Part shown: one piece after another, positions 8,738 through 59,704 of the stretch | Layout of the letters: each line of letters starts with the position of its first letter | Numbering within the stretch: the first letter of the stretch is position 1 | Notes under the pieces: generated by a model | What the model saw: only the letters and a program-made list of their open reading frames with translations | The model's database searches: none | What the model was told of the DNA's origin: nothing | Position numbers and translations under genes: made by a program | Assembly (NCBI GenBank): GCA_965112735.1 | Contig: OZ218961.1 | Span: forward strand, 2,604,001-2,668,000 | Source of the DNA: Phaeosaccion multiseriatum | Lineage: Eukaryota > Protista > Ochrophyta, other classes | Direction of reading: 5' to 3' | DNA: 64,000 nt

Positions 8738-8780
<43 letters not shown>

Positions 8781-9790: not shown

Positions 9791-9824
<34 letters not shown>

Positions 9825-18239: not shown

Positions 18240-18419
18240 AGAGGAGGAGGAGGAGGAGGATATATATATATATATTATATATATATACATATATTCGAAA
18301 GCGAATACTCAAAAAAGGCTTCGTGTTAATAATAATACATCGTACAGCAGATCACTACGAGAAGTCACAAAACCGCAGGTTTGTGGATAGAGAAATGTTG
18401 GTTGTTTGTCCCTCAGTCC

Positions 18420-18752
18420 CTACTTCTCGTACGGGATGGCGTCCTCAATGACTTGTACAATGCTCTCCGCCGCCGCACTCAGCTCGCCAAGGTCATCCCA
18501 GCGCACCACCGCTTCCCCTCCTGCCGCTACTGCTTCTGCTCCTCCTCCTCCTCCTCCTCCTGCTGCTGCTCCTCCTGCTCCTCCTCCTCCTCCTCCTGCT
18601 CCTGCTCCTGCTCCTCCTCCTCCTGCTGCTGCTGCTGCAGCTGCTGCGGCCTCTTTGCGCGACTCCTTCTTTACTCTCACCTTCTTCGCTTGTCCCTTCG
18701 CGGCGATGGTTGCCACGGTGGAAGGCACAGGAGTATGGACTGAGTCCACGGC

Positions 18753-18784
<32 letters not shown>

Positions 18785-20347: not shown

Positions 20348-20431
<84 letters not shown>

Positions 20432-22719: not shown

Positions 22720-22754
<35 letters not shown>

Positions 22755-23221
22755 AGAGGGCGAGTAGAAGGCAGGTATAGAGAGGGGTAGCCGAGCAGAG
22801 GGGCGAAGAAAGGAGCGGCGGCCGAGGCTAGACGGTTAGTCATCTGCGTAGTCGCCATCTGCGTAGTCGCCATCTGCGTGGTCGCCATCTGCGCTACAAC
22901 TGAGCAAACAAGAGTAGAGTGTTTGTCTGTCTATCGCACCGACCCACCTACCGCACGTCTACAGGAACACGTGTGCTGTCAGTATCACTCTACACCCATC
23001 CTTACATATCCTTACATAATGATGACTGTGACACCCATCCTTCATTTTTTGTGGCTGACATCCATCCTTTGAAAATCCTTAGAGAATCCTTACCTCTACA
23101 GGTTTAAGTGCAGCCAACTCCTTGAGGTTTATCCTCCACACCGCGGGCATGTTGTTCTGTGTCTTGATGAGGGGAGTGGCGGCTTCGATGAGAGCCTGCA
23201 GCGGACAGAGAGAGAGGTAAC

Positions 23222-31700: not shown

Positions 31701-34700
31701 TCCGCTCCTGCTCGCTTCTCCTCCTGCTCTCTCTCTCCCTCTCTCGCTCCTCCTCCTCCTCCTCCTCCTCCTCCTCCTCCTCCTCCTCCTCCTCCTCCTC
31801 CTCCTCCTCCTCCTCCTCCTCCTGCTCTCTCTCTCCCTCTCTCGCTCCTCCTCCTCCTCCTCCTCCTCCTCCTCCTCCTCCTCCTATACCACCAACTGCT
31901 CCATCACTGGCACTCTCCCCTCTCCAGCCCCCATTCGAGCCGCACTGAAGGATTGCGAGCTCAAGACAGAGGAGCTGCGCAACTGCTTTGCTGACTTACT
32001 CAGGAGTGATGAGGACATGATCGCGCTGCTCCTCACCGAGAAGGAGAGGTGAGCGAGTGAGCACGGACACTGGATGGCAGCTGATGGATGGATGGATGGG
32101 TGGATGGCAGCTGATGGATGCATGGGTGGGTGAATGTATGGACCTTTGAACTTTGAACGGGACCGGTCTTCCGACCACCGGCAGTGCCAGTTTCCAGCTT
32201 TCAGTCTCAATTTGAGTTTCAAACGCATGCATGCCCACAACGCAGGGTCGGAAACAACGCGATTGTGGAGTACGAGAAGCATAACATGGTGAGTTTGTGA
32301 ATCAGTGAGTGAGTGAGTGAGTGATTGAGTGAGGGAGGGAGGGATTGCGTGAGTGCGTGAGTGCGTGAGTGCGTGGGTGCGTGAGTGGGTGAGTGAGGAA
32401 GAGATAGTGCCATGCCATCACCTCATTTCCATATACCTCCGTCTTCGTCCGTATGCCTCCATGATCATCCCAGGTGGAGCTGCTGCTGGAGCGGTACCAT
32501 CGCCAGCTTCTCATATCACAGCACGAGGTCAGAGCAAGTTAGAGCTGGTCAGGGAGGGAAGGACAGGGGAGGAATCAGAGCTTCGCCGTCCATACCACAC
32601 GCCTGTTGACAGCCTCCCCGAGAGCGATGAGTCTGAGCATGTTTAGTTCACCCCTATTATACTTTCTATCCGGAAAGGAAATAAAGAGGAAGAGTGTCCA
32701 AATATTGCCCAAATATTGTCTAAATTGATAGAATAGAATGATTGAACCGCTTTACCCTCACGCCCCCCCCCCCGTATCCCCCTATTCCCCACAGGTAGCT
32801 GTGATGATGAGTGAGCTGCAAGGCGCCCAGGAGCTTGCTGCCATCAACCTCGATCTGTTCCGGAACAGAATGATGTAAGTAGGCACCTCTCTACCTTCCC
32901 TTTCCTTCCCTTTCCTTCCTCCTGTTCATGTCAGTATGTAACGTGTCTCCCTCTCTCTCCCCTCTCTCTTCCCTCTCCCTCTCTCTCTCCTCCCTCCCTC
33001 CCTTTCTTCTCTCTCTCTCCCTTATCTCCCACTCTCTCCTCTATCCCTCTCTCTCTCCCTCCCTCTCTCTCCCTCTCCCTTTCCCTCTCTCTCCCCTCTC
33101 TCTCCTTCTCTCTCTGTCCCCGTCTCTCTCTCTCCTCTCTCTCCTTTCTCTATCTCTGTATGTGTGCTCCCCCCCCCCAACCTCGTCCCCCGGGGGTCCC
33201 TTAGCCGTATCGAGATGCAACTGACCATGCTCAGCATCGGCGTGGCCATGGGAGGAGCTCTTTACGTAAGTTTACGTAGTCTTTCGAAAGGAGGAGTAGA
33301 GAAGAGTAGAGTAGAGAGAGAGGGAGAGTGTGGAGAGTACTTGAGGGATGGAACACACTGTCTGACGGCATCGTTTCGTGTTCACCCTTCCTCTCTCTCT
33401 CTCGTTCTCCCTGTGTCCTCCTCTCCTCCCACGTGTCGCTTTACTGCCTTACTGCACAGGGAGCAATGGGGATGAACCTCATGCACGGTGAGAGGAGTGG
33501 CGGTTACGGAAAGGCAGACGGACAGGACGGCTTCGCAGTAGACGTCGATGAAGAAGTCTTTCTTATGGACCACCACTCCCACACACCACACCCTCACACC
33601 CACACACCACACCCTCACACCCACCCACCCACCCACCCACCCACCCATCCACCCACCCAACCACCCACCCACCCACTCATCCACACACCCACACACCCAT
33701 CCACCCACCCACCCATCCACCCACCCATCCATCCACCCACCCACCCACCCACCCACCCATCCAAACATCCACCCACACACCCACGCACCAACCCACACGC
33801 ACCCATTGACTTACTACCCATCCACAGGGGCGGAGGAGCTGCCCAACGCCTTCGGAGTGGCGGTAGGGTCGGGGCTGGGCATTGTCGTAGTGGCGTACTC
33901 GGGCTTCATTTTGTATTGGCGCTCGGTGGCAAACTCCAAGATTTTGGACACGCACTCAATAGAGACGGTTCAGTTTCAGAGCCTCTTGTCGCTCTTTTCC
34001 AAGGTGGGGGAGGGAGGGAGGGAGGGAGGGAGGGAGGGAGATGGGAGGGAAATGGGAGGGAGGGAGGGAGGGAGATGGGAGGGAGATGGGAGGGAGATGG
34101 GAGGGAGGGAGGGAGGGAGGCGTAAGGCAGAGCGCAGCCTTGGAACGATTAATGTGACAGTTACGATGCTACTTTCTTTCTGCAAGCCTTGCTTACTCTC
34201 CGTTCTTCTCCTCTCCTCCTCTTGCCTCTCTTCTCCTCCCCCCCTTCCCTCCCCTCCTTCCCTCCCCTCTCTCCCCCTCCCCTCTCTCCCCCTCCCCTCT
34301 CTCCACCTCCCCTCCCCTCACCTCTCCTCTCCTCTCCCCTCCTCTCCCTCTCCCCAGGTGGGCGCCATCGAAATCGTCCTTCGTGAAGCCCTGCGAGATA
34401 AGCAGCAACAAGCTCTGGCAGCTGAGGGAAAAGGGGCGTCCGCCTCAGGAGGAAAGGGGACACTGAAGAAACAAGAGTCAGAGACAGAGAAGACCACCAC
34501 CACCACCACCACCACTACCACCACCATGGGGGCAGGGAGGGAGAGAGAGGAGAAGCCTTCACAGCGACCATCATCATCATGCTCATTATCATCATCGTCA
34601 TCATCATCATCATCATCCGCGTCGGCGCCAGTTGTAGACCGGGAGAAAATGCGAAAGTTGCTCCTGCAGGAGACGGGCATAGCGTGTTCGGACGAGGAGC

Positions 34701-42879: not shown

Positions 42880-45800
42880 CTAGTGCATACGTGCCATCTC
42901 CTCAACACGCCTATACACATCCTCCACCGTCACCTTGCACAGCATCGCCTGCGTCGCTCCTTCGCTCCCACCACCACTTCCACCTCCCTCTCCTCCCCCT
43001 CCCTCTCCACCTCCTCCTCCTCCTCCTCCTCCCCCTCCTCCTCCTCCTCCTCCTCCTCCGCTAGCACCATCACCAATAGGAATGCTGGCGCCAGTGATCC
43101 CTGCCTGCGCACCCTCTCGCATGACCTTGACCACCTCCTCCTGCTTCTCCCTACCGAGGTCAACGAAGGTCTCAATAAGGTCTCCGTCGAGCATGTGCAT
43201 CGCTTCCGCCTGGCGACGCGTGGAGTAAAAGGACCGCCACTCCGTATGAGTGAGCCCTCCCACCCCCTTGGTCGCCTTGCGCAGCGCCGTTTGAAGGCTC
43301 CGAAGCACGGTATAGTTGGGCTTGGAGAGAGTCAGGATAACTCCAACCATCCCAGAGACGGTTCCAAAGAGCACCGGCTCGCCCACGGTGAGAGGCTGTT
43401 GTACCACCAACTGCTGCCCATCACCGCCACCGTCACCAGCACCAGCACCAGCACCAGCAGCACCACCACCACCACCACCGACAGCAGCAGCAGCAGCAAT
43501 GGCAAGTGCCGACCCGACCGTTTCAGTGGGTTGCACCACCAGGGACCCCTTGACAAATCGATTGATAAACTCTCCGATATGGTACTCTCCCTGCAGCTCC
43601 AGCCGCACTCTCTCTTCCTCCGTGGCCGCATCCGCGTTTCGCCTCACGGAAAAGATGTTGGAGTCGTTTTCAGCCACGACAAAGTTGTCGTCATCAAACA
43701 TCTCCACCGCGGTGACCCAATTGCAGTTTAAATCACGAGCCAGTACCTCCACCTTACCGTCCACATACCCTGAGCCACTCCTCCCCGCCATGGCCTTCCC
43801 TCCTCCTCCCCCTCCTCCCCCTCCTGCTGCTGCCGAAGACGAAGCCCCCCCCCTCCCACCACCACCACCCCCACCCGTAGACTCCTCTGTCTGTCCCTCC
43901 GCCTGCCCCTTCCCGTTGCCGTGCCCCTGCTGCTGCTGCTGAGCAGGCTTGTATGTGAGGAGAGTCACAGATCGCATCATATCACCAACCAGGATGAAGT
44001 CTCCCCGTGTGGCAATGTGCAGAGTGACGGAGTGCACCTGGCGGGTGGACTCGGGGACAAGATCCACCATACCTGAGGAGGGCGAGGAGGAGGAGGAGGA
44101 GGAGGAGGAGGAGATGTGCGGCGTATAGGTAACATGATGTAGCAGGCAACATATGTCATTGGAACACAAGTGGGACACGTAAGAGTACGTACATGCTCCA
44201 TGGACAAGTAGAGCAAGGCAAAGGATGGATTGATGGATGGATGGAGGTACCGAGGACCTGTACCCTACCCTACCCTACCCTACCTACCCTATCTTACTCT
44301 ACCCTACGCTACCCTACTCTACCCCTTACCCTACCCTACCCCACCCTACCCTACCATACCCTACCATACCCTACCCTACCCTACCCTACCCTACCTTACC
44401 CTACCCTACCCTACCCTACCTTACCCTACCCTACCCTACCCCACCCTACCTTACCCTACCCTTACCCTACCCTAGCCTACCGTACCCCACCCTACCCTAC
44501 GCTACCCTACCATACCACACCCTACCCTCCCCTCCCCTCCCCTCCACTCCCCCCCCCCCCCCCCTCTCTCTCTTACTCACCATCGCTGGACACCTTCCAC
44601 CTGTACAGCTGAATCATATTGTTCACACCAACGAGGAGGCGAGGCCCAAAAGCGCTGAGGCAGTAGGCGGACCCCTTGATGGCCTTCTCCGCCACAAGTC
44701 GCACCTTCCTCTCCGCCCCCTCCCCCTGCACGGCAAACACCAGCACTCTGCCCGCCTTGGGTTCGAACTCGTCTTCGATGAGGAAAGCGGTGCCCACCGC
44801 GATTTGCTTCTCCGATGCTGCTGTATCACCAACTGCTGCTGCTGCTGCTCTTGTTCCTCCTGCTGTTGCTGGGCACAGTGAATTATACGGGTAAAAAGGA
44901 ATACACACATGGGACGTTAAGAAATCACTATTGAGTGGTGTGTGACGGTGCGTACACTACGTCGGTATACGTAAGAAGGAAGAAGGGAAGAGCGAAAAAT
45001 GGAAGATAGGACATGAACAGCCATGTGGATGGATCGATGTGCGGCTGAGAGAGACAGGGAGACAGACAGAGAGAGAGAGAGAGAGAGATCGAGACAGAGA
45101 AAAAGAGAGAGGGGGGGAGAGACAGAGAGAGGGACAAGGGAGAGCGAGAGAAAGATAGAGACCGCGATGTGGAGAGACAGAGCCATTACGGACCGACGGA
45201 TACCCAACCCCTTCCTTCCTCCATCGATTGATTCATTCGCCCCTTCCCCATCCTCAGCCACTCCCTTGCCCCTGTCCCATGCAATTCCCCTCTCCCTCCT
45301 CCCCCCCCCACCAAACTCACCTCCTCCCTCGGGCCTCTCCCTCTCCCCCTCCTTCTCCCCTCCCCCCTCAACGTCCGCTAGCGAGACAACCGCCATGCTG
45401 GAGGCAAACTCAAGCGGCAGCAGGGCATGGCAGTACACTTCCTCGAAGCTTGTGTCGTCCAAAAACCGCACAAAGTGTTGCTCCATCTCGTCTTCTTCTT
45501 CTTCCATGTCGTCCTCTTCCTCCTCCTTCTCGTCGTCGCTGTCGGCATCACTGATATCTTCCATATAGCCTTCCTTTCGTGCTGCTTTCTTACTCCCCCC
45601 TCCTCTTCCCCCTCCTGCCGCTGTAGCTGTTGCTGCTGCAGCAACCTTCTTCGAGTCCGACTCTGGCAACTCCGGGAACTTTTGCGTCAAGAGTCCGTAC
45701 AACCTTCCGTGGTCATGATGGCAGATTCTCCGTGGCTGCTCCCCGAGACGCACCGTCCGAATGTGGAGCTTCTGGATGTCATCGACTGTGCCAATTGTGA

Positions 45801-46406
45801 GGCTGGACTCGTCGGCCAGGGCGAGGCAGTCGGGAAAGGGCTCACTATTGAAGGGGCAGGCGCTGTTCACCTCGCCGATGTTCACGTTGGCGTAGAGGAG
45901 CTTACCGTCGCTAAGGGGAGGGAGGGCGGGAGGGAGGGAAGGGAGGGGAGGGAGGGAGGGACAGAGGGAGGGGGGTTGAAAAGGTTCGTCTGCGATTGGT
46001 CCTGGCCTGAGGTTAGCGATTTCAGTCCGATAGAGAACTGGAACTGAAACCTGCGGATAGAGAACTGAAACTAAATCCTACCTGCCGAACACGACGGTGG
46101 GGCGGTCGCTGGAGACCAACACACAGAGTGCTCCGTTGCTGACAAAGCACGTCAGAGCCAGAGGTTGAGTGCCAAGGGCAACCTGATGAGGAACGAAGGA
46201 GGGAGGGAGGGAGGGAGGGAGGAAGAGAGGGAGGTAGAGAACGAGGGAGAGAGGGAGGGAGAGAGGGAGGGAGGGAGAGGGGGATGGGAGAGACAATGAG
46301 AGATGGTGAGAGAGAGAGTCTCCGTCCTTTCACCTCCTCTTCGGCCCTCTAACTCAAAAACTGTTAAAAAAAGGACCAAAGCCGAAACAACAGCCCGGCC
46401 CGACAC

Positions 46407-46438
<32 letters not shown>

Positions 46439-49400
46439 TACACACACACCACCTACGTACGTACCTTCTTCTGCGCCCCAAGCACCGGCAGCCCCCCCGG
46501 GGTGCCTGGCGCCTCCCCCTCCTCCGTGAAGGTAAGCTGCATGGACACAAGGTGGCCGTCTCCGAGGCCGACGAACAGAACGTGGCCGTAGTCACCGCTC
46601 TGGCATGGGCAGAGGGAGGGAGGGAGGGAGGGAGGGATGGGTTGATTGGTACGGAGGGATGGCAAGCATTATGGGCCCCTCCCCTCCCCTCCCTTCCCCT
46701 CCCCTATCCGCCTGTCCCCTCTACTACCCTCCTCTCCCCTCCACTCCGCTCCCCTTCCCTCCCCTCCTCTCCCTTCCCCTCCTCCCCTCCCCTCCTCTCC
46801 CCTCCCCACCCCTCCCCACCCCCTCTCCTCCTCCCCTCCCTCCACACCCACCTCCAGCGTCGCCAAGGCCACAGAGCGTGCCTGCATGTCGCCCCCAAGC
46901 GACACTCTTCCCACCTCCGTCAAGTCCGGGAGGCGAAGGAGTCGGACTGACAGATCGTTCCACAGTCCCACTGCCACCAGAGAGCTCAACTCAGACGCTT
47001 TTCCCTCCCTCCCACCACCTGAGGTCCCCTCCTGCTTTCCTCCTCCTCCCCCGTCAACATCCATGGCTTCCACTGGGTCGGACTCTGCTGTTGCTGCTGC
47101 TGCTGTATCACCAACTGCTGCTGCTGCTGCTGCTGAGGTATTGGCACTGGGGTTGACTGCGACGCAAGCAACTTCCTCCTCCATTTTGTGCTGAGCTACT
47201 TCAGTGAGACACTTGCCGGAGACGTCAACCTCTAGGTACACCAAATTGCTACTCACATTGCAGAGGGAGAGAGAGAGGGGAGAGGGAAACAGTGAAAGGG
47301 AGAGGGAAGGAGGGGGAGAGACAGAGAGAAGGAGGCAGAGAGAGGAGAGAGGGAGGGAGAGAGAGAGAGAGAGAGGGAGGGAGGGAGGGAGGGGGGGCAA
47401 GGACAGCGAGGGAGAGAAGGAGTGTGAGAGAGGAGGAGGAAGAGCGAAAAGAGAGGATGCAAAACCTGCCTACCCGCCAGCCCCACCCTCACTCACGCCC
47501 CCACTCACTCATTCACTCACGCACCCGCACACTCACTCACTCACTCACTCACTAACTCCCTCACGCACCCCCCCACTCACTCATTTACTCACGCACCCCC
47601 ACACTCACTCACTCACTCACTCACTCACTCACTCACCCTCCTGCGAGCACGACTACGACGTGTTGTTCATTGGCAGCAGCTAGTGTGATGCTTCCTCCGG
47701 CCTCGGGGCTCCATTGACTTACGCTCTGAGGGGAAGGACAGGCGGAAGGAAGGAGACGGGCAGGGGAAGGGACAGGGAGAGTGGGATACAACATGAGAGG
47801 CGACTGAGCAGCGAGAAGGTACATGCCCACACCGCACACATGCCCGCAGTGTGTGTGTGTGCGTGTGTGTGTAGTGAGTATGTGTGTATGTATGTGTATG
47901 TGGGTGTGTGAGTAAGTATCAAATGTACAAACCAAAACTAAACCACGCAACTCCTTCCACCCCCTCCCCTTCCCCTCCCTTCCTCCCTCCATCCATCCAT
48001 CCATCCCTCCCACTCCCCTCCACCTCTCCCTCCCTCCCTCCCTCCCTCCCTCCCTCCCTCCCTCCCTCCCTCCCCCTACCCTACCTTGAGTGTGCCTGCA
48101 TCCAGCACGACCAAGCCGCTCTCCGCCACATGCACAATCATGTCCCCCTTCAGATTGTGACACAGCACCGTCCTGCCCGGCAGTAAGTCAGCAATGTCCA
48201 CCTCTTCCATCTCGTCCCCCTCCATACCGAGCACCCTTGTCTCTGAGATGAAGGCCTGAACGAGGTACTTGTCGAAGGGAGAGGAAGTCGAGGCACGTAG
48301 AGGCCACATGCCTGTGTTGTGTGTGTGCGTGTGTTGTGTGTATGTGTGTGTGTGCGTGTGTGTGTGCGTGCGTGCGTGCACATGTGTGTGTGCGTGTGTG
48401 CGTGCGTGCATATGTGTGTGTGAGAGAGAGGCATTGGAAGAGGGAGAGAGGGTGTGTGTATGGGGTTTGGATGCGTGTGTGTCGTGTATGCGTTAAGTGT
48501 GTTGTTGTTGTTGTTGTTGTTGGGTGTTTGGTGATGGGTCAGTCAGTCCGTCAGACAGTGAGTCCGTCAGACAGTGAGTCCGTCAGACAGTGAGTCCGTC
48601 AGACAGTGAGTCAGTCAGTCAGTCAGTTAGTCGAATGGACAAGGGAAAGAAGTACAAACGCCGATCCATCCCCAACAAACGCTGCGCTGGTGATCCGGAC
48701 CACCTCAGAACTGAGCAAGACCGACCCTCCGCCACGACACATACTCACAACACACCTACGTAAGTCTTAGGTGGATTCCCACACAAACACACACACACAC
48801 ACACACATACACAATTACGTAATTCTAAGGTTGATTCCCACAAGTCAATATATTTACCCTCAGCACCCCCATCTCAAGGCGGTGCCCGGTGACTGGCCGG
48901 CTGGCCTTCGCTTCCCTTACCCTTGATGCCCGGAAGGTCCACGGAAGCTTGTTCGTTGATGCCAATACCGTTACGGATGATGCGGAGAGAGCCGTCTTTC
49001 TGGTTGCCACTACATGTCACCAGCTGGCCCTGACCCTGCTCGGAGGAGAGATACGGAGGGAGAGAGAGAGAGGGAGAGAGAGAGAGAGGGAGGGGAGAAA
49101 AAGAGATAGAGAGAGAAAGAGAGAGAGCGAGCGAGAGAATAGACAGAGAGGGGAGGGGAGAGAGAGAGAGGGAGAGGGAGGGGGAATGTTGTCAAGTCGT
49201 TGGCCTTTGATGTCAGGAGACCCCCCCCCCCCCCGTATTTGGTGCGTGTGACCATGGGCGTCGTTCCTCCATGAACTGCCATCTGTAGGCCACGCACGCA
49301 CTCGCGCACTAACCTGACGCTCAACGTCAACGAGACACATGTCCACAATTGGCCCCAAGTTGGTGAAGGTTTGCAACACCTCCAGCCCCTCCTCCCCCTC

Positions 49401-49700
49401 CCCCTCCCCCTCCCCCTCCCCCTCGCCTTCTGCTGCTGCATCATCCATCCTGTCTCCTGCTCCTTCTCCTGTATCACCAACTGCTGCATCCGACCGGTCC
49501 ATCTTGACAACGGCGCTGTCCCCAAAGGCGCTGCCGATGAAGGCGGCCCCGTTGTGCAGATAGCTGATGCAGGAGGCGCTGCACGTATCGCCGAGCTTCT
49601 CAATGTGAATGGTCTCCACGTTGCGACCGTCGTCAGCGCTACTTGGCGTCAGGACCACGACGTGCAGGCCTGCGGAAAGTGGAAAGAAGGTGTGTGTGTG

Positions 49701-49760
<60 letters not shown>

Positions 49761-50434
49761 TGTGTGTGTGTGTGTGTGTGTACGTGTATGTGTTTGTGTA
49801 TGCGTTTATGTGTGTATATGTGTGTGCGTGGTCGTGTGTGTATGCGTGTGTGCATGTGTGTGTTTGTGTGTATATGTGCATGCGTGTGAGAGAGCATTTG
49901 ATTGTGGACGAGTACAAACAAGAGCAGATGCACCTTCTCTGACAAGGAAACACACGCCCCCCCCCCCCCCCCACACACACACACCCACCCACCCACCCAC
50001 ACACACACATAAACACACACACACCCACACACACACTCACACACACACACACACGCACACACACCCACACACACACACGCACGCACCTCCCCAGTGATCT
50101 CCCATGAGGAACCTCTGCCCAAGGTCGTCAATCTGACCCACTGCTGAGATGACACTGAGGGGCATGCTGGCAGCTTTGAATGCGTCATTACGGCCGTTCC
50201 AGTACGTCACCGTCTGCTCGCCGATGAGGAGTACGCCAACAAAGGGGGGCGGGACAGCCACCAGGCTGGCGCACCCGTCTTCGACTCTCTTCTGCGACCA
50301 GGGACCATTGGCTGGGAGGAGAAGGGGGAGAGGGGAGGAAGAGGAGGAGGAGGAGGGGGAGGAAGAGGAAGAGGAGGAGGGGAAGGGGGGTAGTTGTAGT
50401 TGTAGTAGTAGTAGTAGTAGTTGTTGTTGTTGTT

Positions 50435-50492
<58 letters not shown>

Positions 50493-51840
50493 TAGTAGTA
50501 GTAGTAGTAGAAGCAGCAGCAGCAGCAGTAGTAGGAGGAGGAGGAGGCGGGGGGGGAGGAGGAGGAGGAGGAGGGATAGGGGGCAATGAGAATTCGCTGT
50601 CACGTACTACGCGAAATCATCTGCGTCCTGGGTGTTTTTTATCCTTCGTCCCCTCCCCCCCTCCCTCCCTCCCTCCCTCCCTCACTGTATCACCAACTCA
50701 CCCAGCTGCTTCTCGCGAAGATTGATGGTGTATGTCTTAACGAAGCGGTCGCTGCTCGTGTCCTGGAAGAGTACAGCTATGGTTGGCTTGGTGTGGCCGT
50801 GGAGGAAGCACATGTGAAGGACGGAGAGCTCCTCCTGGGATGGTTTGGGAGGGAGGGATAGAGGGAGAGGGAGAGAAGGAAAGAGAGAGGAGAGGAAGAG
50901 GGAGTAGAGGAGAAGGACAGAGATATAGGGAAGAGAGAGAGGGCGAGAGAGGGAGGATAGAGAGAAGGAAAGAGAGAGGAGAGGGGGAGGGAGAAGGAAG
51001 GGCAAGGGTACAGGGAGAGGATACAAGAATGTGGAGAGTGAGTGAGACGGCAAAGGGGGGGAGGGATCAGCGAGACGTACCCCCCATGTCCGTGCCTAGG
51101 CTCTCACTACTAACCAGCCTGAGGTTGAAAGACTCCCGCAGGTTTCCTCGGGTATCCATCGGGATGATCTGTGGGGCGTTGTGTTGAGCAAGAGACGAGA
51201 GAGGAGATAGGGTCGGACAGGGTATCGGCCACAGCAGGCATGCCAGAGGGAAGAGAGGCAGCTATCGGGAGAGAGAGAGAGAGAGGGACAGGGACACACG
51301 CACACACACATACACACACTGGGAGAGGGAGAGGGAAAGTAGGCCAGAAAAAACTGGAGAGCATTCCCCAAAAACGAAATTGAAAAAAAGGAAGCTCTCT
51401 CTGCCTCTCTCTCTCTGCCTCACCTTCAGAGCCCCTTCATAGACATACATGGCAAGCATACGGCTCAGGGGGTCCACGAGGGCCAGCCTACACGTCTCCA
51501 CGGCCCTGCCGATGCGGTCACGAACACTTGCAGTGGCCTTGGTGAAGAGCTCCTTCCGCTCAGGGTGGTAGCCCATCACGCTCAGCTGGTACTTGGCAGT
51601 GACCACGTACAAGGTCGCTTGGGACTCTCCTGCCACCTTGAAGAGGCCCGCTGCCGCAATCTTACCGAAGATGGGCACGTCGTGTAGCAGTACCAGCCCC
51701 TCCTCCGTGACAAGGTGGATCTCCAGCCGAGTGGAGCGAGCCAGGATCAGGTTGAAGTCATGGGGCGCGGTGAAGTTGCCCGTGAGGCTGTGCGTCACGG
51801 CCGTGGGCTTCTGCGCCGTCACCACGTAGCTCAGCGCCAT
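42880..51840 (-). CDS. DDB1: DNA damage-binding protein 1 (CUL4 adaptor), multi-exon, with low-complexity insertions
   Basis: [117 protein letters not shown]. Confidence 0.97.
44262..44530. repeat. Imperfect (CCCTA)n / (TAGGG)n pentamer array inside a DDB1 intron
   Basis: Seen directly. Confidence 0.9.
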
Positions 51841-52250
51841 GTTTCACCAAGCAATGCGCCCCTTGCAGGTTTGAAGACTTGAAAATCTTTTAAGAGGAGG
51901 CGGGGGGGGGTATATATCGCCCTTCGACCGCTGGCTCAGACAACGACACTTCAGGTATGGGGAAGAGGGGGAAGAGAAGACAAGACCTAGCTTTTGGAGA
52001 CTCCCTCTGTCGCCAAGTGGCAGGGAAAAGCAGCGAGGGACTGAGGATCTGAGGAAGGGCAGTCGCCAAACCCAAGGGGGTACCGGAGAACCAACAGTGG
52101 CACCAGTTGAGATGCAAGTTGACCACATCTATAACAACGCCTCGCAGCATGGCCTTCATTCGTCATCATGGCGTTGTTTGAGTAGAGTACTTCAGCTGCT
52201 GTCTCTGAAAAGTACCTGGAAGCGACAGAATCGAGGGGGCCAGAAGAAAA

Positions 52251-54528: not shown

Positions 54529-56053
54529 TCAAAGGTCAGCCAGGAAGGCGTTCAGTGCCTCCACTGACGCAGAGTAGGCGGCGGAGGCGGCTGGGCCCTG
54601 CTTGCGCCTGGAGCTCACAGTCACGTCCTCCAAAGTCTTGTAGTAAACCTTGGCGTCCTTGGCAGCCTGAGGGTTGTTCTTTGCCAGCGTGTTCATTGCC
54701 TTTCGCAGGTTGTATGCCTGTTTGTTCGGGTGGTGGGTGTAGAGAGAGGGAGGCGGAAGCGGAGGGGGGGGGGGTGTAAGGAAAAGCAACTCTTCTCTCC
54801 TCAAGTCAGGCCGCTTCTTTCTCTTCCACCACCTCCAATTGTGCCTGCTTCGAAGGAAGTGCTCGTCACACCAGCTCAAACATCTGCACCACCACTAACC
54901 AGCAGCCTAACACCCAAATCCCCGGCGTTTTCGCTTCCCTTCCAACCTCCGCAGCCCGTAAGTCGGAACTGCTCCACCCCGAACTGTGCGTAGGAAAGTA
55001 AAGGCACTTTCTGTGTGGTGCCCATGTGGGGCCAGAGCACACCACATGACAAGCCGAGTGCACCTTTCCAGAACGCGCATGCACACAAACAAAACCTTCG
55101 CCACCCCTTCGCACCCCCCTCCCACACACATGCATTGCTTGTTTTCAACAACAGTGGCAATTCGATATAGTACAGCCTCACGCACTCCACGCAACGTACA
55201 TACCTTCTGGTTCAGCACTGCTCGCACCTCCTCCCACTTCTCTCCCTCAATCCACTTGGGGATTTGCTCGAACTTGCTCTGGCTGTCCTTAAGGATGCCA
55301 ATGCTGAACTTCATCTCCGCGTCACCCACACCCTTGTACACGGCAGCTCCACTGTCGGTGTTGCCGTAGGGTGAGTAAGGGGAGTACATGCTGGACTCCG
55401 AGTAGGGGGAGGACATTCCTCCTCCACCCACGGAATCTGAGCTTCCGCCCCACCCGACGATGCCAAAGAGGTTCTGCTTGGGCCCCTCTCCTGAGGCAAA
55501 GGCGGCAGCGGGCAGAGATGCAGCGGCGATACCGGCGGCAGCCTTAGCGGCAAACTCCTTGCGGGAGACACCGCTGTGATTGATGGGAGGAGTACGGCAT
55601 TCATCGAGGAAGGGTAGAGGCGTGAGTAAACGGGTTGGATCATCAGATCTCCTATTGGGACTCAGACCCATCTCTTCGGAGCCGTAAATGCCTCTCTGTT
55701 CATTCTAGCTATAGCTCCACAAATTGCAGGCCCCAGTTGTCTCCTGCTTTGCTGCTCCTTCCCTTAAAATCCCTCCCCTCACTCCTGTAAAAATCTTGCC
55801 CCCATCTCTCGCGGAAGACCCAAGCCGCATTCCCACAGCCATGCATCAGCACATGCACACGCAAAGCCCCTGTTGATGGTGCTGCGTTCATCTGCAGCAG
55901 CTATGTGCTGTGCTGTTGCTGCGTGCCAGTCCCTGTATAACATGTGTCTTCCTTCCTCCCCACGTACCTATCGACCTTCATGGTCACCGGGGACACCATG
56001 AAGGCGGAGGAGGAGGCCACGAGGCCGAGAGCTGCGATAGCGGTGCACTTCAT
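54529..56053 (-). CDS. psbQ: Photosystem II extrinsic PsbQ'-like protein; exons 56053-55968, 55573-55204, 54717-54529
   Basis: Signal peptide + SSAF, SRKEF lumen-targeting signal ending AFA, YSPYSPYG motif, helical bundle KWEEVRAVL..KAYNLRKAM. Confidence 0.8.
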
Positions 56054-56230
56054 GATGTCTATAGTAGGCGCGCAAAGAGGCAGGGAGGGAGTAAGGTATT
56101 TAGCAAAGGGATTGAAGGGCAGATTTCAGCCCACGACGACACATGAATTCCCGAGGGGGTGCGAAACCCAGGGGGCTTCACAACCACAGGCTGGTTGTTA
56201 AAGCTTGCCCAACGCTTGGTGGGCTTCAGC

Positions 56231-56267
56231 TGGTCAGGCCAAGCTGTTCGATTCAGCCTTCTCTGCG
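56231..56267 (+). pseudogene. 3' fragment of tRNA-Sec (variable arm with 3-nt deletion, T arm, acceptor 3' strand)
   Basis: tggtc-aggccaagctgttcgattcagccttctctgcg matches the 3' part of the downstream copies. Confidence 0.75.
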
Positions 56268-56298
56268 TTCTCCACTGGACCTCTCTCCGTCTACCGCG

Positions 56299-56385
56299 GC
56301 AAGGATGATCCGAGATGGTTCTCAGGGCGGCCTTCAAAGCCGTCGTGGTCGAGAGGCCAAGCTGTTCGATTCAGCCTTCTCTGCG
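56299..56385 (+). tRNA. tRNA-Sec(UCA) copy 1 (one D-stem mismatch)
   Basis: 9/4 fold, CTTCAAA anticodon loop; TCTCAG instead of TCTCGG in the D-stem. Confidence 0.75.
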
Positions 56386-56416
56386 TTCACCAATGGACCT
56401 CTCTCCGTCTACCGCG

Positions 56417-56503
56417 GCAATGATGATCCGAGATGGCTCTCGGGACGGCCTTCAAAGCCGTCGTGGTCGAGAGGCCAAGCTGTTCGATTCAGCCTTCTCT
56501 GCG
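56417..56503 (+). tRNA. tRNA-Sec(UCA) copy 2 (three substitutions)
   Basis: G5>T in acceptor, TGGC D-loop, GACGGC anticodon stem (G-U converted to A-U). Confidence 0.75.
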
Positions 56504-56586
56504 TTCCCCAGTGGACCTCCACCTCTCCCCCCTCCTCCTCTCCTCTCTCCTCCCTGACCTTTTCTACACCACGTCCATCAACCCCG

Positions 56587-56673
56587 GCAAGGATGATCCG
56601 AGATGGTTCTCGGGGCGGCCTTCAAAGCCGTCGTGGTCGAGAGGCCAAGCTGTTCGATTCAGCCTTCTCTGCG
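56587..56673 (+). tRNA. tRNA-Sec(UCA) copy 3
   Basis: GCAAGGATG AT CCGAGA TGGT TCTCGG GGCGGC CTTCAAA GCCGTC G TGGTC GAGA GGCCA A GCTG TTCGATT CAGC CTTCTCTGC G: 9-bp acceptor, 6-bp D-stem/4-nt loop, 6-bp anticodon stem, long V arm, 4-bp T-stem, discriminator G. Confidence 0.88.
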
Positions 56674-56717
56674 TTCCCCAGTTCCTCCCCCCATTTACAC
56701 CACGTCCATCAACCCCG

Positions 56718-56804
56718 GCAAGGATGATCCGAGATGGTTCTCGGGGCGGCCTTCAAAGCCGTCGTGGTCGAGAGGCCAAGCTGTTCGATTCAGCCTTCTC
56801 TGCG
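56718..56804 (+). tRNA. tRNA-Sec(UCA) copy 4
   Basis: Identical to copy 3. Confidence 0.88.
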
Positions 56805-56887
56805 TTCACCAATGGACCTCTACCTCTCCCTCCTCCTACTCTCCTCTCTCCTCCCTGACCTCTTCTACACCACGTCCATCAACCCCG

Positions 56888-56974
56888 GCAAGGATGATCC
56901 GAGATGGTTCTCGGGGCGGCCTTCAAAGCCGTCGTGGTCGAGAGGCCAAGCTGTTCGATTCAGCCTTCTCTGCG
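56888..56974 (+). tRNA. tRNA-Sec(UCA) copy 5
   Basis: Identical to copy 3. Confidence 0.88.
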
Positions 56975-57057
56975 TTCACCAATGGACCTCTACCTCTCCC
57001 TCCTCCTACTCTCCTCTCTCCTCCCTGACCTCTTCTACACCACGTCCATCAACCCCG

Positions 57058-57144
57058 GCAAGGATGATCCGAGATGGTTCTCGGGGCGGCCTTCAAAGCC
57101 GTCGTGGTCGAGAGGCCAAGCTGTTCGATTCAGCCTTCTCTGCG
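57058..57144 (+). tRNA. tRNA-Sec(UCA) copy 6
   Basis: Identical to copy 3. Confidence 0.88.
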
Positions 57145-57227
57145 TTCCCCAGTGAACCTCTATCTCTCTCTCCTCCTACTCTCCTCTCTCCTCCCTGACC
57201 TTTTCTACACCACGTCCATCAACCCCG

Positions 57228-57314
57228 GCAAGGATGATCCGAGATGGTTCTCGGGGCGGCCTTCAAAGCCGTCGTGGTCGAGAGGCCAAGCTGTTCGATT
57301 CAGCCTTCTCTGCG
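57228..57314 (+). tRNA. tRNA-Sec(UCA) copy 7
   Basis: Identical to copy 3. Confidence 0.88.
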
Positions 57315-57397
57315 TTCCCCAGTGGACCTCTACCTCTCCCCCCTCCTACTCTCCTCTCTCCTCCCTGACCTCTTCTACACCACGTCCATCAACCCCG

Positions 57398-57484
57398 GCA
57401 AGGATGATCCGAGATGGTTCTCGGGGCGGCCTTCAAAGCCGTCGTGGTCGAGAGGCCAAGCTGTTCGATTCAGCCTTCTCTGCG
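57398..57484 (+). tRNA. tRNA-Sec(UCA) copy 8
   Basis: Identical to copy 3. Confidence 0.88.
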
Positions 57485-57567
57485 TTCCCCAGTGAACCTC
57501 CATCTCTCTCTCCTCCTACTTTCCTCTCTCCTCCCTGACCTTTTCTACATCACGTCCATCAACCCCG

Positions 57568-57654
57568 GCAAGGATGATCCGAGATGGTTCTCGGGGCGGC
57601 CTTCAAAGCCGTCGTGGTCGAGAGGCCAAGCTGTTCGATTCAGCCTTCTCTGCG
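57568..57654 (+). tRNA. tRNA-Sec(UCA) copy 9
   Basis: Identical to copy 3. Confidence 0.88.
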
Positions 57655-57979
57655 TTCACTACTGGACCTCTCTCTCTCCCGCACCCCCTCTCTCCTCTCC
57701 TTTTCTGTGCGTTCTCCACACCCACCAAGTCAGCAAGAAGGTTTAGAAAATGTCGTTTTTAGAGCAGAGCGAGTTTGCGAGTGGATGTTCTCGATAAGGA
57801 CGCGACTGAAAATAGACTTCACTGATTGCTGCCTCGAGCGGTGCGATGCTTTTTTGAGGGAGAGAGTTTCACGATTATGAAGAGAACGTCCTCCAACCCA
57901 ACCCAATCCAACCCAACCAACAAGCAATAGCACAATGGGTTGCAGTGCTTGTCGTTCACGCACTCGCAGTTCGTCGGCT

Positions 57980-58013
<34 letters not shown>

Positions 58014-58459
58014 TGTGTGTTTCGCTCGTCTGTGCTACGGATTCCCCTCCGCCGTGCCCACCGCTCAAGTGCAGCTGCAGGACTGCGACAGCAGCCTGGA
58101 CGAGCGATACCGCATGCCGCATGCATTGCCAATGCCGCCCCACGGTTACAAAAATTGACCCCCTTCTTCCATCCCGTCCCCACCACCCCCGCGATGCTGT
58201 ACACATACACACACACGCACACACAAACGTACGCATACGCACGCACCCGCTTCGCGGTTGAGCGAGCAATGCCATCGCCTCGGCCGTGATGCCGCCCGCC
58301 CAGTGTCCGTGAGACAGATGCATGGGCATGGGCCTCCTTTCCCCCCCCCTGTCTATTTTTCTTGGCAACCGCACTGTTCAGTTGGTCGGAAGAGCGAGAA
58401 ACTTCTCTCCCTCCCCTCCACTTCCCTCCCCTTACTGACACTTAGACACTTGTCCCTTC

Positions 58460-59704
58460 TCATAGCTCCAGGTGCTCAGTGCTCTCACATCGCTTCACAA
58501 AGTCCGTCTTCTCCAAGCATCCATTGCAGTCCACGCCTCTCTCGCCCAGGATGGCCTTGAGCTGAGGGAGGTGCGTGTGACATGAGTGAAGACAGACCAG
58601 CGAACAGGGCAGGGAGGGGAAGAGATTGTTTGAAATTTGCGGAGTAAGACGCAACGATCCCGAGGGCAGAAACCCCCCCTTCTTTCCTCGGAGCTCACTC
58701 ACTCAACTCAAACATACACATACACACACCTGCTTAACCCTCAGCTTGTTGTAGTCTACGTTGCCCTTCTCGATCTTCATGGGGTATTTCACCTCGCAAA
58801 TCTCAGAGTTGGTCTTCTTCAGTCGCTGACACACCTGAAGAGGAGAGGCAGAACGGTTCAAGGAAAGAAGCAAGGGGATTGGTGAGGCCAAGGAAATCAA
58901 AGTACCCCTGTACTAGCCCTAGGACAACGAGTGAACAATCATCCACCCACACACAGCACTCATTTCAACAAAAAGGAAGAGGAGCATACGCCTAGATAAA
59001 AGACAGTCTAAGGAACCTTGTGTACTGATATACCAACCCCACCTTGTTCTTGGGAATACCCGTGCTGAAGGGTTGGCTGATTGCCTTCTTGATGGGGAGA
59101 AAGTAGTAGCACATCTTGTCATCTTTTGCGCTGAGCCGCCCTTCGCAGAACTTGTCGATGGCCGCCTCAATGGCCGACTGCTTCTTCCTGTCCTTTTTGT
59201 CCAGAGCCGCATCTACCTTCTCTAGCACACTGATGCAAACTGAGGCCCAACCAAAGGGAGGAGGGAGGCAAGCCGGTGAGGAACCAACGGGATTAGAGGG
59301 AGTACATCTCATCTACCGAAGAGCCATGGGACTCTAACTGCTGCTCGCTACAAGTGGCACAGCTTTTGGAGAACCAAGAGGATCGGGGGGGCTAAGGACA
59401 AGGCCCCAGCTCGGAGTCGGTAGCAGCACGTGAAAGCCCACTTCGATCATCATCACGAGTGAAGCGACCACTTCCCTTCCTATCCCTCGCCCAGCTCCTG
59501 GGAAAGGCTAGCTCCCTCCAGAGTATACTGGAGTGAACCCTCTTCCCCTTCACCAGAAACACTCTGCGGTACAGCAATAGGGGACTAAGCCCAGCCCAGC
59601 TCCTCACCTTCGCATTCCTTCGGATCCGCGGTCGCGGTCTTGCCGCTAACCACAGCACACAGCAGAGTGGCCAGCACCAGCCGTGCAACAAGACGGAGGT
59701 ACAT
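58460..59704 (-). CDS. MANF: MANF/ARMET/CDNF-family ER protein; exons 59704-59608, 59239-59043, 58834-58730, 58561-58460
   Basis: Signal peptide; ECEVCISVL, KFC...KDDKMCYY, PKNKVCQRLKKTNSEICEVKY (saposin-like); KLRVKQLKAIL.ERGVDCNGCLEKTDFVKR (SAP-like, CxxC); KDEL-like C-terminal HLEL. Confidence 0.9.

What the first reader, a model, noticed from the sequence alone, without database searches (positions are those of the whole stretch)
56231..57654. Tandem array of nine selenocysteine tRNA (UCA) genes
Seen: the conserved 87-nt core of this 118-170-bp repeat folds as a eukaryotic 9/4 tRNA-Sec. It has a perfect 6-bp D-stem (CCGAGA/TCTCGG) with a TGGT loop, a 6-bp anticodon stem around CTTCAAA, a long V arm capped by GAGA, a 4-bp T-stem with TTCGATT, the acceptor U-U pair and a G discriminator. 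There are nine full copies plus a 3' fragment. Copies 3-9 are identical in the tRNA body, while the pyrimidine-rich spacers carry substitutions and a deletion. Known: Sec-using eukaryotes normally have one tRNA-Sec gene, and some ochrophytes have very large selenoproteomes. Inference: dosage amplification of the Sec-decoding tRNA under purifying selection, pointing to heavy UGA-Sec use. Caveat: every copy has an A4:C mismatch in the acceptor stem.
Basis: partly seen in the sequence, partly recalled or inferred. Interest (0 to 1): 0.92.

Follow-up and report, generated by a model that had tools for sequence, protein, structure and literature searches.

The report
Tandem array of selenocysteine tRNA genes
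An alga carries nine head-to-tail copies of the gene for the selenocysteine tRNA, which most eukaryotes keep as a single copy; the array is real and looks functional, but similar multi-copy cases are already reported in a diatom and a haptophyte.

Summary
Window 56299-57654 (+) holds nine 87-nt tRNA-Sec(UCA) genes. A decayed tenth copy lies at 56218-56267. All nine score 66-71 bits on Rfam RF01852 (gathering score 47), and ARAGORN calls eight. The main copy folds on its own into the eukaryotic 9/4 cloverleaf, with a 6-bp D-stem, a long V-arm and G73.

Copies 3-9 are identical. Their spacers carry 10 variable sites in 83 nt against 0 in 87 nt of tRNA body (P about 8e-4). Word depth in a DNA-like run of the same organism puts the tRNA body at 8.6 times the flanks, so the array is not an assembly inflation.

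The best reading is a functional, amplified tRNA-Sec locus kept uniform by selection and unequal exchange. Expression was not shown. The link to a large selenoproteome is untested, and the published multi-copy cases do not show such a link.

Only four T4 runs lie in or just after the array, so read-through multi-tRNA precursors are plausible.

Precedents are Fragilariopsis cylindrus (11 predictions) and Diacronema lutheri (9 genes). The window is not D. lutheri: its GC is about 57%, against 73% for that genome. This is a new member of a known kind, of moderate interest. The scan noted this same stretch once before (s1-343499).

The parts
56218..56267 (+). Decayed tenth copy at the left edge. 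It is homologous to the anticodon arm through the 3' end of the tRNA. Deletions remove part of the anticodon loop and the V-arm. The last 37 nt are identical to the canonical 3' part.
   Evidence: Local alignment to a canonical unit; sequence.
56299..56385 (+). tRNA-Sec copy 1, a variant. G26 to A gives a C13:A26 mismatch in the D-stem, and the predicted cloverleaf is lost. It is probably impaired. A 31-nt spacer with no T-run follows.
   Evidence: Rfam 67.0 bits; not called by ARAGORN; MFE is not a cloverleaf.
56417..56503 (+). tRNA-Sec copy 2, a variant with three changes. G5 to T adds a U:U mismatch next to A4:C. The D-loop reads TGGC. G29 to A turns a G:U pair into A:U. The cloverleaf is kept.
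   Evidence: Rfam 66.0 bits; ARAGORN; fold.
56587..56673 (+). tRNA-Sec copy 3, canonical sequence. A 44-nt spacer (deletion form) follows.
   Evidence: Rfam 71.1 bits; ARAGORN; MFE is the 9/4 cloverleaf at -35.7 kcal/mol.
56718..56804 (+). tRNA-Sec copy 4, canonical. Unit 4 (body plus spacer) is identical to unit 5.
56888..56974 (+). tRNA-Sec copy 5, canonical.
57058..57144 (+). tRNA-Sec copy 6, canonical.
57228..57314 (+). tRNA-Sec copy 7, canonical.
57398..57484 (+). tRNA-Sec copy 8, canonical.
57568..57654 (+). tRNA-Sec copy 9, canonical and the last copy.
57655..57704 (+). Spacer-like pyrimidine-rich trailer after copy 9. It is homologous to the first 45 nt or so of the 83-nt spacer and ends in a T4 run at 57701-57704. 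This is the right edge of the array.
   Evidence: Alignment; T-run inventory.
56560..56563 (+). T4 run 56 nt after copy 2. It is the first candidate Pol III stop for copies 1-2.
57201..57204 (+). T4 run 56 nt after copy 6. It is the first T4 after copies 3, 4, 5 and 6; the matching site in spacers 4, 5 and 7 reads TCTT.
57541..57544 (+). T4 run 56 nt after copy 8. It is the first T4 after copies 7 and 8.
56571..56586 (+). Invariant block (ACGTCCATCAACCCCG) directly upstream of every canonical copy, with a CAA at -8 to -6. The 17 columns before each of copies 3-9 show no variation, while the rest of the spacer varies. It is a candidate upstream promoter or leader element. The coordinates give the instance before copy 3.
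   Evidence: Spacer alignment. The function is inferred.

Best explanation
This is a genuine, amplified nuclear tRNA-Sec(UCA) locus in an alga with a red-type complex plastid, probably an ochrophyte. Seven identical genes and two older variant genes lie head to tail. They arose by unequal crossing-over of a 170-bp unit made of an 87-nt tRNA and an 83-nt pyrimidine-rich spacer, and a decayed copy marks the left edge. Each intact copy would give an 87-nt tRNA, 90 nt once CCA is added. By the established eukaryotic pathway, SerRS charges it with serine (long V-arm, G73), PSTK phosphorylates it (6-bp D-stem, 4-nt D-loop), SepSecS converts it to Sec-tRNA (13-bp 9/4 acceptor/T helix), and eEFSec delivers it to SECIS-marked UGA codons. 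The bodies are kept identical by purifying selection together with homogenisation, while the spacers drift. The likely effect is a higher supply of tRNA-Sec. Transcription is most likely by Pol III through the intact internal B box (GTTCGATTC). T4 runs follow only copies 2, 6, 8 and 9, so some copies probably read through into the next unit and are released by RNase P and RNase Z. Shown here: the identity, structure, copy number and conservation pattern. Inferred: transcription, processing, charging and the dosage effect.
For: All nine copies match Rfam tRNA-Sec at 66-71 bits against a gathering score of 47, over the full length of the model. ARAGORN calls eight tRNA-SeC(tca) genes. The MFE and the centroid of the canonical copy are exactly the 9/4 cloverleaf, at -35.7 kcal/mol. 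Against four other tRNA-Sec sequences fetched from metagenomes, the structure keeps 93% of cells paired. Sixteen of 30 pairs change on both sides, 0 of 500 shuffles reach the observed value, and slid controls give 39-47% paired. The U8:U79 mismatch is shared by all. Bodies of copies 3-9 have 0 variable sites in 87 nt. Spacers 4-8 have 10 in 83 nt (P = 7.7e-4), and units 4 and 8 differ at 9 of 83 spacer sites against 0 of 87 body sites (Fisher P = 0.0012). Run X1 behaves like DNA, with flat depth of 81-93 over exon, intron and intergenic DNA. In it the 102-nt body unitig has depth 748.9, or 8.6 times the flanks, and occurs 7 times in the assembly. G73 is present in all copies; Secmarker found G73 essential (PMC5330540). 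The B box is conserved. The first T4 lies 46-56 nt downstream where present, similar to the human gene at 45 nt (PMC2943599).
Against: No direct evidence of a mature tRNA was obtained. The only RNA-like run of this organism (X5) shows depth 0-15 over the array, and the tRNA body was not recovered from it. That run is probably an mRNA-type library, which would miss tRNAs in any case. Every copy has an A4:C83 mismatch on top of the conserved U:U, so the acceptor stem has 7 standard pairs of 9. I could not scan the rest of the genome for a better-paired tRNA-Sec locus, for Sec machinery or for selenoproteins. Five of the nine copies have no T4 before the next tRNA. Pyrimidine-rich spacers may simply mutate faster, which would inflate the contrast with the bodies. 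X1 is probably the sample the assembly came from, so the depth check is not fully independent.
Confidence: 0.72

Rival explanations
1. The array is a neutral by-product of unequal crossing-over, in effect a small tRNA-derived satellite. Most or all copies are silent or non-functional, and Sec decoding is served by one copy here or by a separate locus. The uniformity of the bodies reflects recent amplification and gene conversion rather than selection for dosage.
For: All copies share the A4:C mismatch. Copies 1 and 2 and the left-edge fragment show that decay does happen at this locus. Units 4 and 5 are identical over 170 bp and the variants are arranged as a mosaic, which fits ongoing exchange. 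Clustered tRNA genes can be epigenetically silenced in plants (PMC13578239). Secmarker found no link between tRNA-Sec copy number and selenoproteome size. There is almost no signal over the array in the RNA-like run X5.
Against: Spacers between the same units differ at up to 11% of sites while the bodies differ at none (P about 1e-3). Recent amplification alone does not explain this. The 17 columns just upstream of every canonical copy are also invariant. The canonical copy scores 24 bits above the Rfam threshold and folds correctly. G73 is retained in all nine.
Confidence: 0.15
2. The array is transcribed as one long polycistronic precursor by Pol II from the divergent promoter it shares with the very highly expressed psbQ'-like gene. 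It would tie tRNA-Sec supply to photosynthetic gene expression, as tRNA-Sec is Pol II-transcribed in trypanosomes.
For: The array starts about 130-200 bp from the 5' end of the psbQ' mRNA contigs (56080-56094), in divergent orientation. Most units lack a T-run of their own. There is no TATA box upstream. [quoted passage not shown] One 89-nt RNA-run contig spans copy 1, the spacer and copy 2.
Against: The B box is intact, whereas it is degenerate in the trypanosomatid Pol II-transcribed genes. In X5 the stretch 56170-56286 between the promoter and the array has depth 0, and the array has depth 0-15, against roughly 9,000-23,000 on the psbQ' exons. T4 runs at a human-like 46-56 nt after copies 2, 6, 8 and 9 look like Pol III stops. 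The first units downstream of the promoter are the defective ones.
Confidence: 0.07
3. The array is an assembly artefact: a single tRNA-Sec gene was expanded into many copies by the assembler.
For: Secmarker found that many apparent multi-copy tRNA-Sec cases were identical duplicates caused by assembly. Units 4 and 5 are identical.
Against: Word depth of the shared body unitig is 8.6 times that of the single-copy flanks. Unit-specific spacer unitigs are at 1.3-2.8 times the flanks. The reads therefore contain at least as many copies as the assembly, and perhaps one to three more. The units also differ from one another in their spacers. A second sample (X5) holds a copy1-spacer-copy2 junction with 2 differences.
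Confidence: 0.02

Closest known systems
Multi-copy tRNA-Sec in the diatom Fragilariopsis cylindrus (Santesmasses et al. 2017, PMC5330540)
   Same: It is a photosynthetic stramenopile with many tRNA-Sec predictions: eleven non-identical ones, of which two are structurally disrupted and several carry G73. It mixes intact and impaired copies, as here.
   Different: That paper does not describe a tandem arrangement, and some of its copies differ by compensatory changes. Here seven bodies are identical and the units lie in one 1.5-kb head-to-tail array. The species differs as well.
Nine tRNA-Sec genes among 56 nuclear tRNA genes in the haptophyte Diacronema lutheri (EMBO J 2026 review, PMC13578239)
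   Same: The copy number, nine, is the same, it is a marine alga with a red-derived plastid, and dosage for Sec incorporation is the proposed meaning.
   Different: It is a different organism. D. lutheri nuclear DNA is 73.25% GC (PMC8379373), while this window is 53-63% GC. The review gives no arrangement, sequence or spacer analysis, and it says the selenoproteome size is unknown.
Canonical single-copy eukaryotic tRNA-Sec (human TRU-TCA, Rfam RF01852)
   Same: It shares the 9/4 fold, the 6-bp D-stem with a 4-nt loop, the UCA anticodon in a CUUCAAA loop, the long V-arm, G73, the U:U mismatch in the acceptor stem, the GGAUGAUCC 5' block, and a first T4 about 45-56 nt downstream.
   Different: It is single-copy with TATA, PSE and activator elements upstream. 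None is recognisable here. This tRNA also has an extra A4:C mismatch.
Tandem tRNA homoclusters such as the Arabidopsis tRNA-Pro and Ser-Tyr-Tyr arrays (Hummel et al. 2020, cited in PMC13578239)
   Same: These are head-to-tail repeats of one isotype produced by unequal exchange, and whether the extra copies are active is an open question.
   Different: They involve abundant elongator tRNAs in land plants and are largely silenced. Land plants have no tRNA-Sec at all.
Trypanosoma brucei tRNA-Sec genes inside a Pol II polycistron (Aeby et al. 2010, PMC2943599)
   Same: There is more than one identical tRNA-Sec gene, no adjacent Pol III terminator, and release from a longer precursor.
   Different: The trypanosome genes have a defective B box and sit inside a protein-coding polycistron. 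Here the B box is intact and T4 runs follow four of the nine units.

Membership tests
tRNA-Sec (Rfam RF01852), eukaryotic type | Covariance-model score above the curated threshold and better than the general tRNA model of the same clan | tested here: met
   All nine copies score 66.0-71.1 bits against a gathering score of 47, over the full model 1-91. Only the best match within the clan is kept.
tRNA-Sec (Rfam RF01852), eukaryotic type | UCA anticodon in a 7-nt loop on a 6-bp anticodon stem | tested here: met
   ARAGORN places anticodon tca at position 36. The CUUCAAA loop is invariant and the 6-bp stem is 100% paired with 5 covarying pairs.
tRNA-Sec (Rfam RF01852), eukaryotic type | 13-bp acceptor plus T helix in the 9/4 arrangement | tested here: met
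   A 9-position acceptor stem and a 4-bp T-stem appear in the CM alignment and in the MFE fold. Two of the nine acceptor positions are mismatches: A4:C83, specific to this array, and U8:U79, shared by every compared tRNA-Sec.
tRNA-Sec (Rfam RF01852), eukaryotic type | 6-bp D-stem with a 4-nt D-loop (the PSTK identity element) | tested here: met
   The stem is CCGAGA/UCUCGG with a UGGU loop in copies 3-9. In copy 2 the stem is intact and the loop reads UGGC. In copy 1 the stem is broken by C13:A26.
tRNA-Sec (Rfam RF01852), eukaryotic type | Long variable arm and G73 discriminator (the SerRS identity elements) | tested here: met
   The V-stem is 5 bp with a GAGA loop, and G is at position 87 (G73) in all nine copies.
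tRNA-Sec (Rfam RF01852), eukaryotic type | Expressed as a mature CCA-ended tRNA, serylated and converted to Sec-tRNA | not testable with these tools
   Only contig-level data from an mRNA-type run were available, with array depth 0-15. No small-RNA or tRNA-seq run was offered.
tRNA-Sec (Rfam RF01852), eukaryotic type | The genome also encodes the Sec machinery and SECIS-bearing selenoprotein genes | not testable with these tools
   Only this window can be read, and no SECIS match was found in it. Two unchecked scan notes report candidate UGA/SECIS genes elsewhere in the genome.
Pol III type-2 tRNA gene | Internal B box close to GGTTCGANTCC | tested here: met
   TGTTCGATTCA is present in every copy and GTTCGATTC is invariant.
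Pol III type-2 tRNA gene | A T-run terminator shortly after each gene | tested here: inconclusive
   T4 runs lie 46-56 nt after copies 2, 6, 8 and 9 only. Copies 1, 3, 4, 5 and 7 meet the next tRNA first. The minimum T-run length for Pol III in this organism is unknown.
Vertebrate-type tRNA-Sec promoter (TATA at -30, PSE, activator element) | TATA box near -30 and a PSE near -70 | tested here: not met
   The upstream 83 nt are pyrimidine-rich with no TATA. Only a TTTTCTA or TCTTCTA stretch lies at about -29 and a CAA at -8 to -6.
tRNA-derived SINE or satellite | A degenerate tRNA-related head joined to an unrelated body and tail, with dispersed or very long arrays and loss of tRNA structure | tested here: not met
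   The copies are full-length and high-scoring. There are only nine, at one locus within the window, and there are no other matches to the core in the 64 kb.

The most novel reading that the evidence does not exclude
The array works as a set of multi-tRNA transcription units. Copies 1-2, 3-6 and 7-8 share single downstream T4 stops, and the T/C polymorphism at spacer position 58 creates or removes the stop. Several identical tRNA-Sec molecules would then be cut from one precursor by RNase P and RNase Z. This may happen in the open chromatin of, or even driven by, the divergent promoter of the extremely highly expressed psbQ' gene, which would couple Sec-decoding capacity to photosynthetic activity. 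The universal A4:C mismatch might be tolerated, or it might be repaired after transcription.
Probability: 0.15. Interest if true: 0.65.

Novelty: new member of a known kind. Interest (0 to 1): 0.5.

Why it matters
tRNA-Sec is the one tRNA that nearly all Sec-using eukaryotes keep as a single gene, and its level helps decide which selenoproteins get made. A clean, sequence-resolved tandem array offers a natural case for asking whether tRNA-Sec supply can limit Sec decoding and whether gene dosage answers that limit. This array has seven identical active-looking copies, two decaying copies and one dead copy. Its spacers drift while its bodies do not. It also gives a ready test of how Pol III, or another polymerase, handles tandem tRNA genes that lack their own terminators. 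It adds a third algal lineage to the two published multi-copy cases. That suggests repeated, independent amplification in marine algae rather than an oddity of one genome.

Tried and rejected
1. Identifying the window as Diacronema lutheri because the count of nine is the same. Rejected: that genome is 73.25% GC, while the window is 53-63% GC.

2. Identifying the organism.
   - The PsbQ' exon search gave only three hits. The best named one was the brown alga Discosporangium at 49% identity.
   - Searches with the SF3B3-like last exon and the Josephin ORF gave nothing usable.
   - The cluster look-up gave no names.
   - The exact look-up of the PPR ORF found nothing.
   - The protein atlas gave only 'Eukaryota'.
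   - The lineage therefore remains 'alga with a complex red plastid, probably ochrophyte'.

3. Looking for relatives of the array in public collections.
   - The metagenome scan with a generic eukaryotic tRNA-Sec pattern found five loci, none close to this tRNA.
   - The viral scan found none.

4. Looking for SECIS or other RNAs in the window. None reached threshold. The sub-threshold miRNA-like hits are long hairpins that match on both strands.

5. The bacterial-type promoter and terminator scan is not relevant to a eukaryote, and it found nothing in the array.

6. Assembly artefact: rejected on word depth.

7. An abundant Pol II precursor from the psbQ' promoter is not supported by X5 depth, but it is not excluded.

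Full report
**What is there**

The stretch 56218-57704 on the + strand is a head-to-tail array. It holds nine complete 87-nt units starting at 56299, 56417, 56587, 56718, 56888, 57058, 57228, 57398 and 57568. They are separated by spacers of 31, 83, 44, 83, 83, 83, 83 and 83 nt.

Copies 3-9 are identical. Copy 1 differs by one base (G26 to A). Copy 2 differs by three bases (G5 to T, T21 to C, G29 to A). To the left of copy 1 lies a decayed tenth copy at 56218-56267. It aligns from the anticodon arm to the 3' end but has lost part of the anticodon loop and the V-arm. After copy 9 about 45 nt of spacer-like sequence follow, and then the DNA is unique.

**Is it a tRNA-Sec?**

- Rfam RF01852 matches all nine copies end to end at 66.0-71.1 bits, against a gathering score of 47 and with E-values of 1.5e-12 to 3e-11. 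No other Rfam family reaches threshold anywhere in the 64 kb.
- ARAGORN independently calls eight tRNA-SeC(tca) genes and misses only copy 1.
- Folded alone, the canonical sequence gives exactly the eukaryotic 9/4 cloverleaf as both MFE and centroid, at -35.7 kcal/mol. The fold has:
  - a 9-position acceptor stem;
  - a 6-bp D-stem with a UGGU loop;
  - a 6-bp anticodon stem around CUUCAAA;
  - a 5-bp V-stem with a GAGA loop;
  - a 4-bp T-stem with UUCGAUU;
  - a G discriminator.
- Copy 1 loses the cloverleaf because of a C13:A26 mismatch. Copy 2 keeps it, but its acceptor stem has three mismatches.

I fetched other tRNA-Sec genes from metagenomes with a generic pattern. This gave five loci and eight Rfam hits, which I aligned with the window copies. 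On that alignment the named structure has 93% of cells paired. Sixteen of 30 pairs change on both sides. None of 500 shuffles reaches the observed values, and slid controls give 39-47% paired.

The U8:U79 mismatch is present in every sequence, so it is a family trait. The A4:C83 mismatch is peculiar to this array. The membership tests for eukaryotic tRNA-Sec that can be done on sequence are all met. Expression, charging and the presence of the Sec machinery could not be tested.

**Is the copy number real?**

One reads call was allowed. Run X1 belongs to the same organism code as the window and shows no differences from it. It behaves like DNA: depth is flat at 81-93 over the psbQ' exons, its intron and the intergenic flanks.

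| Unitig in X1 | Window position | Depth | Ratio to flank mean (87) | Exact copies in assembly |
|---|---|---|---|---|
| tRNA body plus 17 upstream nt (102 nt) | 56570-56671 | 748.9 | 8.6 | 7 |
| Spacer 4/5 type | 56950-57029 | 241.3 | 2.8 | 2 |
| Spacer 7 type | 57295-57371 | 163.7 | 1.9 | 1 |
| Spacer 8 type | 57471-57579 | 113.9 | 1.3 | 1 |

(Depths; ratios and copy counts.)

The reads therefore hold at least as many copies as the assembly. They may hold one to three more, or the array length may differ between haplotypes. A half-depth 1-nt insertion at 57677 also hints at two haplotypes. Word depth from contigs is a rough measure, and X1 is probably the assembly's own sample. Even so, the data rule out the usual artefact of a single gene expanded by the assembler.

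**Selection or just recent duplication?**

Among the 83-nt spacers of units 4-8 there are 10 variable sites. Among the seven canonical bodies there are none in 87 nt. If changes fell evenly, the chance that all ten land in the spacer is 7.7e-4. Units 4 and 8 differ at 9 of 83 spacer sites and 0 of 87 body sites (Fisher P = 0.0012).

The 17 columns just upstream of every canonical copy, which end in CATCAACCCCG, are also invariant. Units 4 and 5 are identical, and the variants are shared among units in a mosaic pattern. This points to continuing unequal exchange or conversion.

The simplest reading is concerted evolution plus purifying selection on the tRNA and a short upstream element. The caveat is that CT-rich tracts may mutate faster.

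**How it probably works**

The B box (GTTCGATTC) is intact in all copies. This is the feature the trypanosome study uses to argue for ancestral Pol III transcription of tRNA-Sec (PMC2943599). There is no TATA box or recognisable PSE upstream, so the vertebrate type-3-like promoter is not evident.

T4 runs occur only at 56560, 57201, 57541 and 57701. These lie 56, 56, 56 and 46 nt after copies 2, 6, 8 and 9. In spacers 4, 5 and 7 the same site reads TCTT. Spacer 3 has only a TTT, and spacer 1 has no T-run at all.

The 46-56 nt distance resembles the human gene, whose first T4 is 45 nt downstream. If this organism's Pol III needs four Ts, copies 1-2, 3-6 and 7-8 would be co-transcribed and then separated by RNase P and RNase Z. 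This is an inference.

The only supporting observation is weak. In run X5, an 89-nt contig at depth 14.9 spans the 3' part of copy 1, the 31-nt spacer and the 5' part of copy 2. X5 is RNA-like, with psbQ' exons at roughly 9,000-23,000, the intron at about 12, and spliced overhangs present. A second X5 contig, at depth 82, reaches 25 nt into the 3' end of copy 9 from the downstream flank. Its strand is unknown, and it may belong to the convergent downstream gene. The tRNA body itself was not recovered from X5, as expected for an mRNA-type library.

**Surroundings**

The array sits in the intergenic region between two minus-strand genes.

- **Left: a PsbQ-family (psbQ') gene.** It matches PF05757 relatives. 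Its ATG is at 56055, and the mRNA contigs end at 56080-56094. Spliced contigs in two runs confirm a GT..AG intron at 55574-55967. The gene is divergent from the array and extremely highly expressed.
- **Right: a gene with an ARMET/MANF N-terminal exon** at 58992-59312. It is convergent with the array.

An earlier scan note (s1-343499) proposed a polycistronic transcript from the psbQ' bidirectional promoter. The X5 depths do not support an abundant transcript of that kind: 0 at 56170-56286 and 0-15 over the array. They cannot exclude a rapidly processed one.

**Whose genome?**

It is not Diacronema lutheri. That nuclear genome is 73.25% GC (PMC8379373), while this window is 53-63% GC.

The PsbQ' leader has a signal peptide followed by phenylalanine (ASSSA|F), which is typical of algae with complex red plastids (my own knowledge). 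The best named PsbQ' relative is from the brown alga Discosporangium, at 49% identity. Other scan notes call the genome ochrophyte-like. I could not get closer than this.

The window's own proteins appear to be absent from the protein collection. The genome is therefore probably unannotated, and this array is probably unreported for this species.

**Comparison with what is known**

- tRNA-Sec is usually single-copy (PMC5330540; PMC13578239).
- The Secmarker survey found multi-copy cases, most strikingly eleven non-identical predictions in the diatom Fragilariopsis cylindrus. It remarked that such genomes do not have unusually many selenoproteins.
- A 2026 review reports nine tRNA-Sec genes among the 56 nuclear tRNA genes of the haptophyte D. 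lutheri. It reads them as a large investment in Sec decoding, while noting that the selenoproteome is unknown.
- Neither source describes a tandem arrangement, the spacers or the terminators.
- In passing, three metagenome contigs (L001, L003, L004) from an unknown eukaryote carry two tRNA-Sec genes 263 bp apart. The upstream one lacks G73. Small tandem duplications of this gene therefore occur elsewhere too.

**Verdict**

I file it as a new member of a known kind, with moderate interest (0.5). The most interesting open point is the sparse terminators, which make multi-tRNA-Sec precursors likely enough to be worth a direct test.

Noticed in passing
window 55203-56094 (- strand): A PsbQ-family (psbQ') gene lies divergent from the array. 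Its ATG is at 56055, and its signal peptide ends ASSSA|F. Spliced contigs in two runs confirm a GT..AG intron at 55574-55967, and a further intron begins below 55203. Exon depth in the RNA-like run X5 is roughly 9,000-23,000, against about 12 in the intron.
   Followed up: partly
L001:730-1079, L003:250-598, L004:201-549: Metagenome contigs from an unidentified eukaryote carry two tRNA-Sec genes in tandem, 263 bp apart. One scores 71.2 bits with G73. The other scores 57 bits, has a 1-nt deletion and ends in A instead of G73, so it is a likely pseudogene.
   Followed up: partly
window 57730-57760 and 56194-56204: In run X5 a contig that joins the window at 57760 carries different letters before that point, including GGTTGTTAAAG. 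That 11-mer also stands at 56194-56204, just upstream of the array. It could be a diverged allele of the downstream flank, a direct repeat flanking the array, or chance. Only 30 of its letters were shown.
   Followed up: no
window 57677: In the DNA-like run X1, one contig (depth 80 of 173) has an extra C after 57677, in the CT-rich trailer. This suggests two haplotypes or a homopolymer uncertainty in the assembly.
   Followed up: no
window 58992-59312 (- strand): An exon matches the ARMET/MANF N-terminal domain (PF20145, E = 7e-9). The gene is convergent with the tRNA array. RNA-run depth of 56-515 over 57574-58392 may be its 3' UTR.
   Followed up: no
window 42883-51843 (- strand): A multi-exon gene of the RSE1/DDB1/CPSF160/SF3B3 beta-propeller family. 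The first propeller lies at 51265-51843 and 49020-49805, the second at 44920-46077, and the CPSF_A region at 42883-44274.
   Followed up: no
window 21024-21271, 34008-34334, 46597-46722, 49813-50075, 50502-50729: These stretches match several unrelated miRNA-precursor models on both strands, far below threshold. They look like long hairpins, inverted repeats or low-complexity sequence rather than miRNA genes.
   Followed up: no
window 7171-10821 (-) and 11490-13481 (+): A 1216-aa uninterrupted PPR-repeat ORF and a 663-aa ORF that is almost entirely ankyrin repeats. Neither has an exact or close match in the protein collection.
   Followed up: no
window 57981-58020: A (GT)20 microsatellite lies 330 bp downstream of the array.
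   Followed up: no
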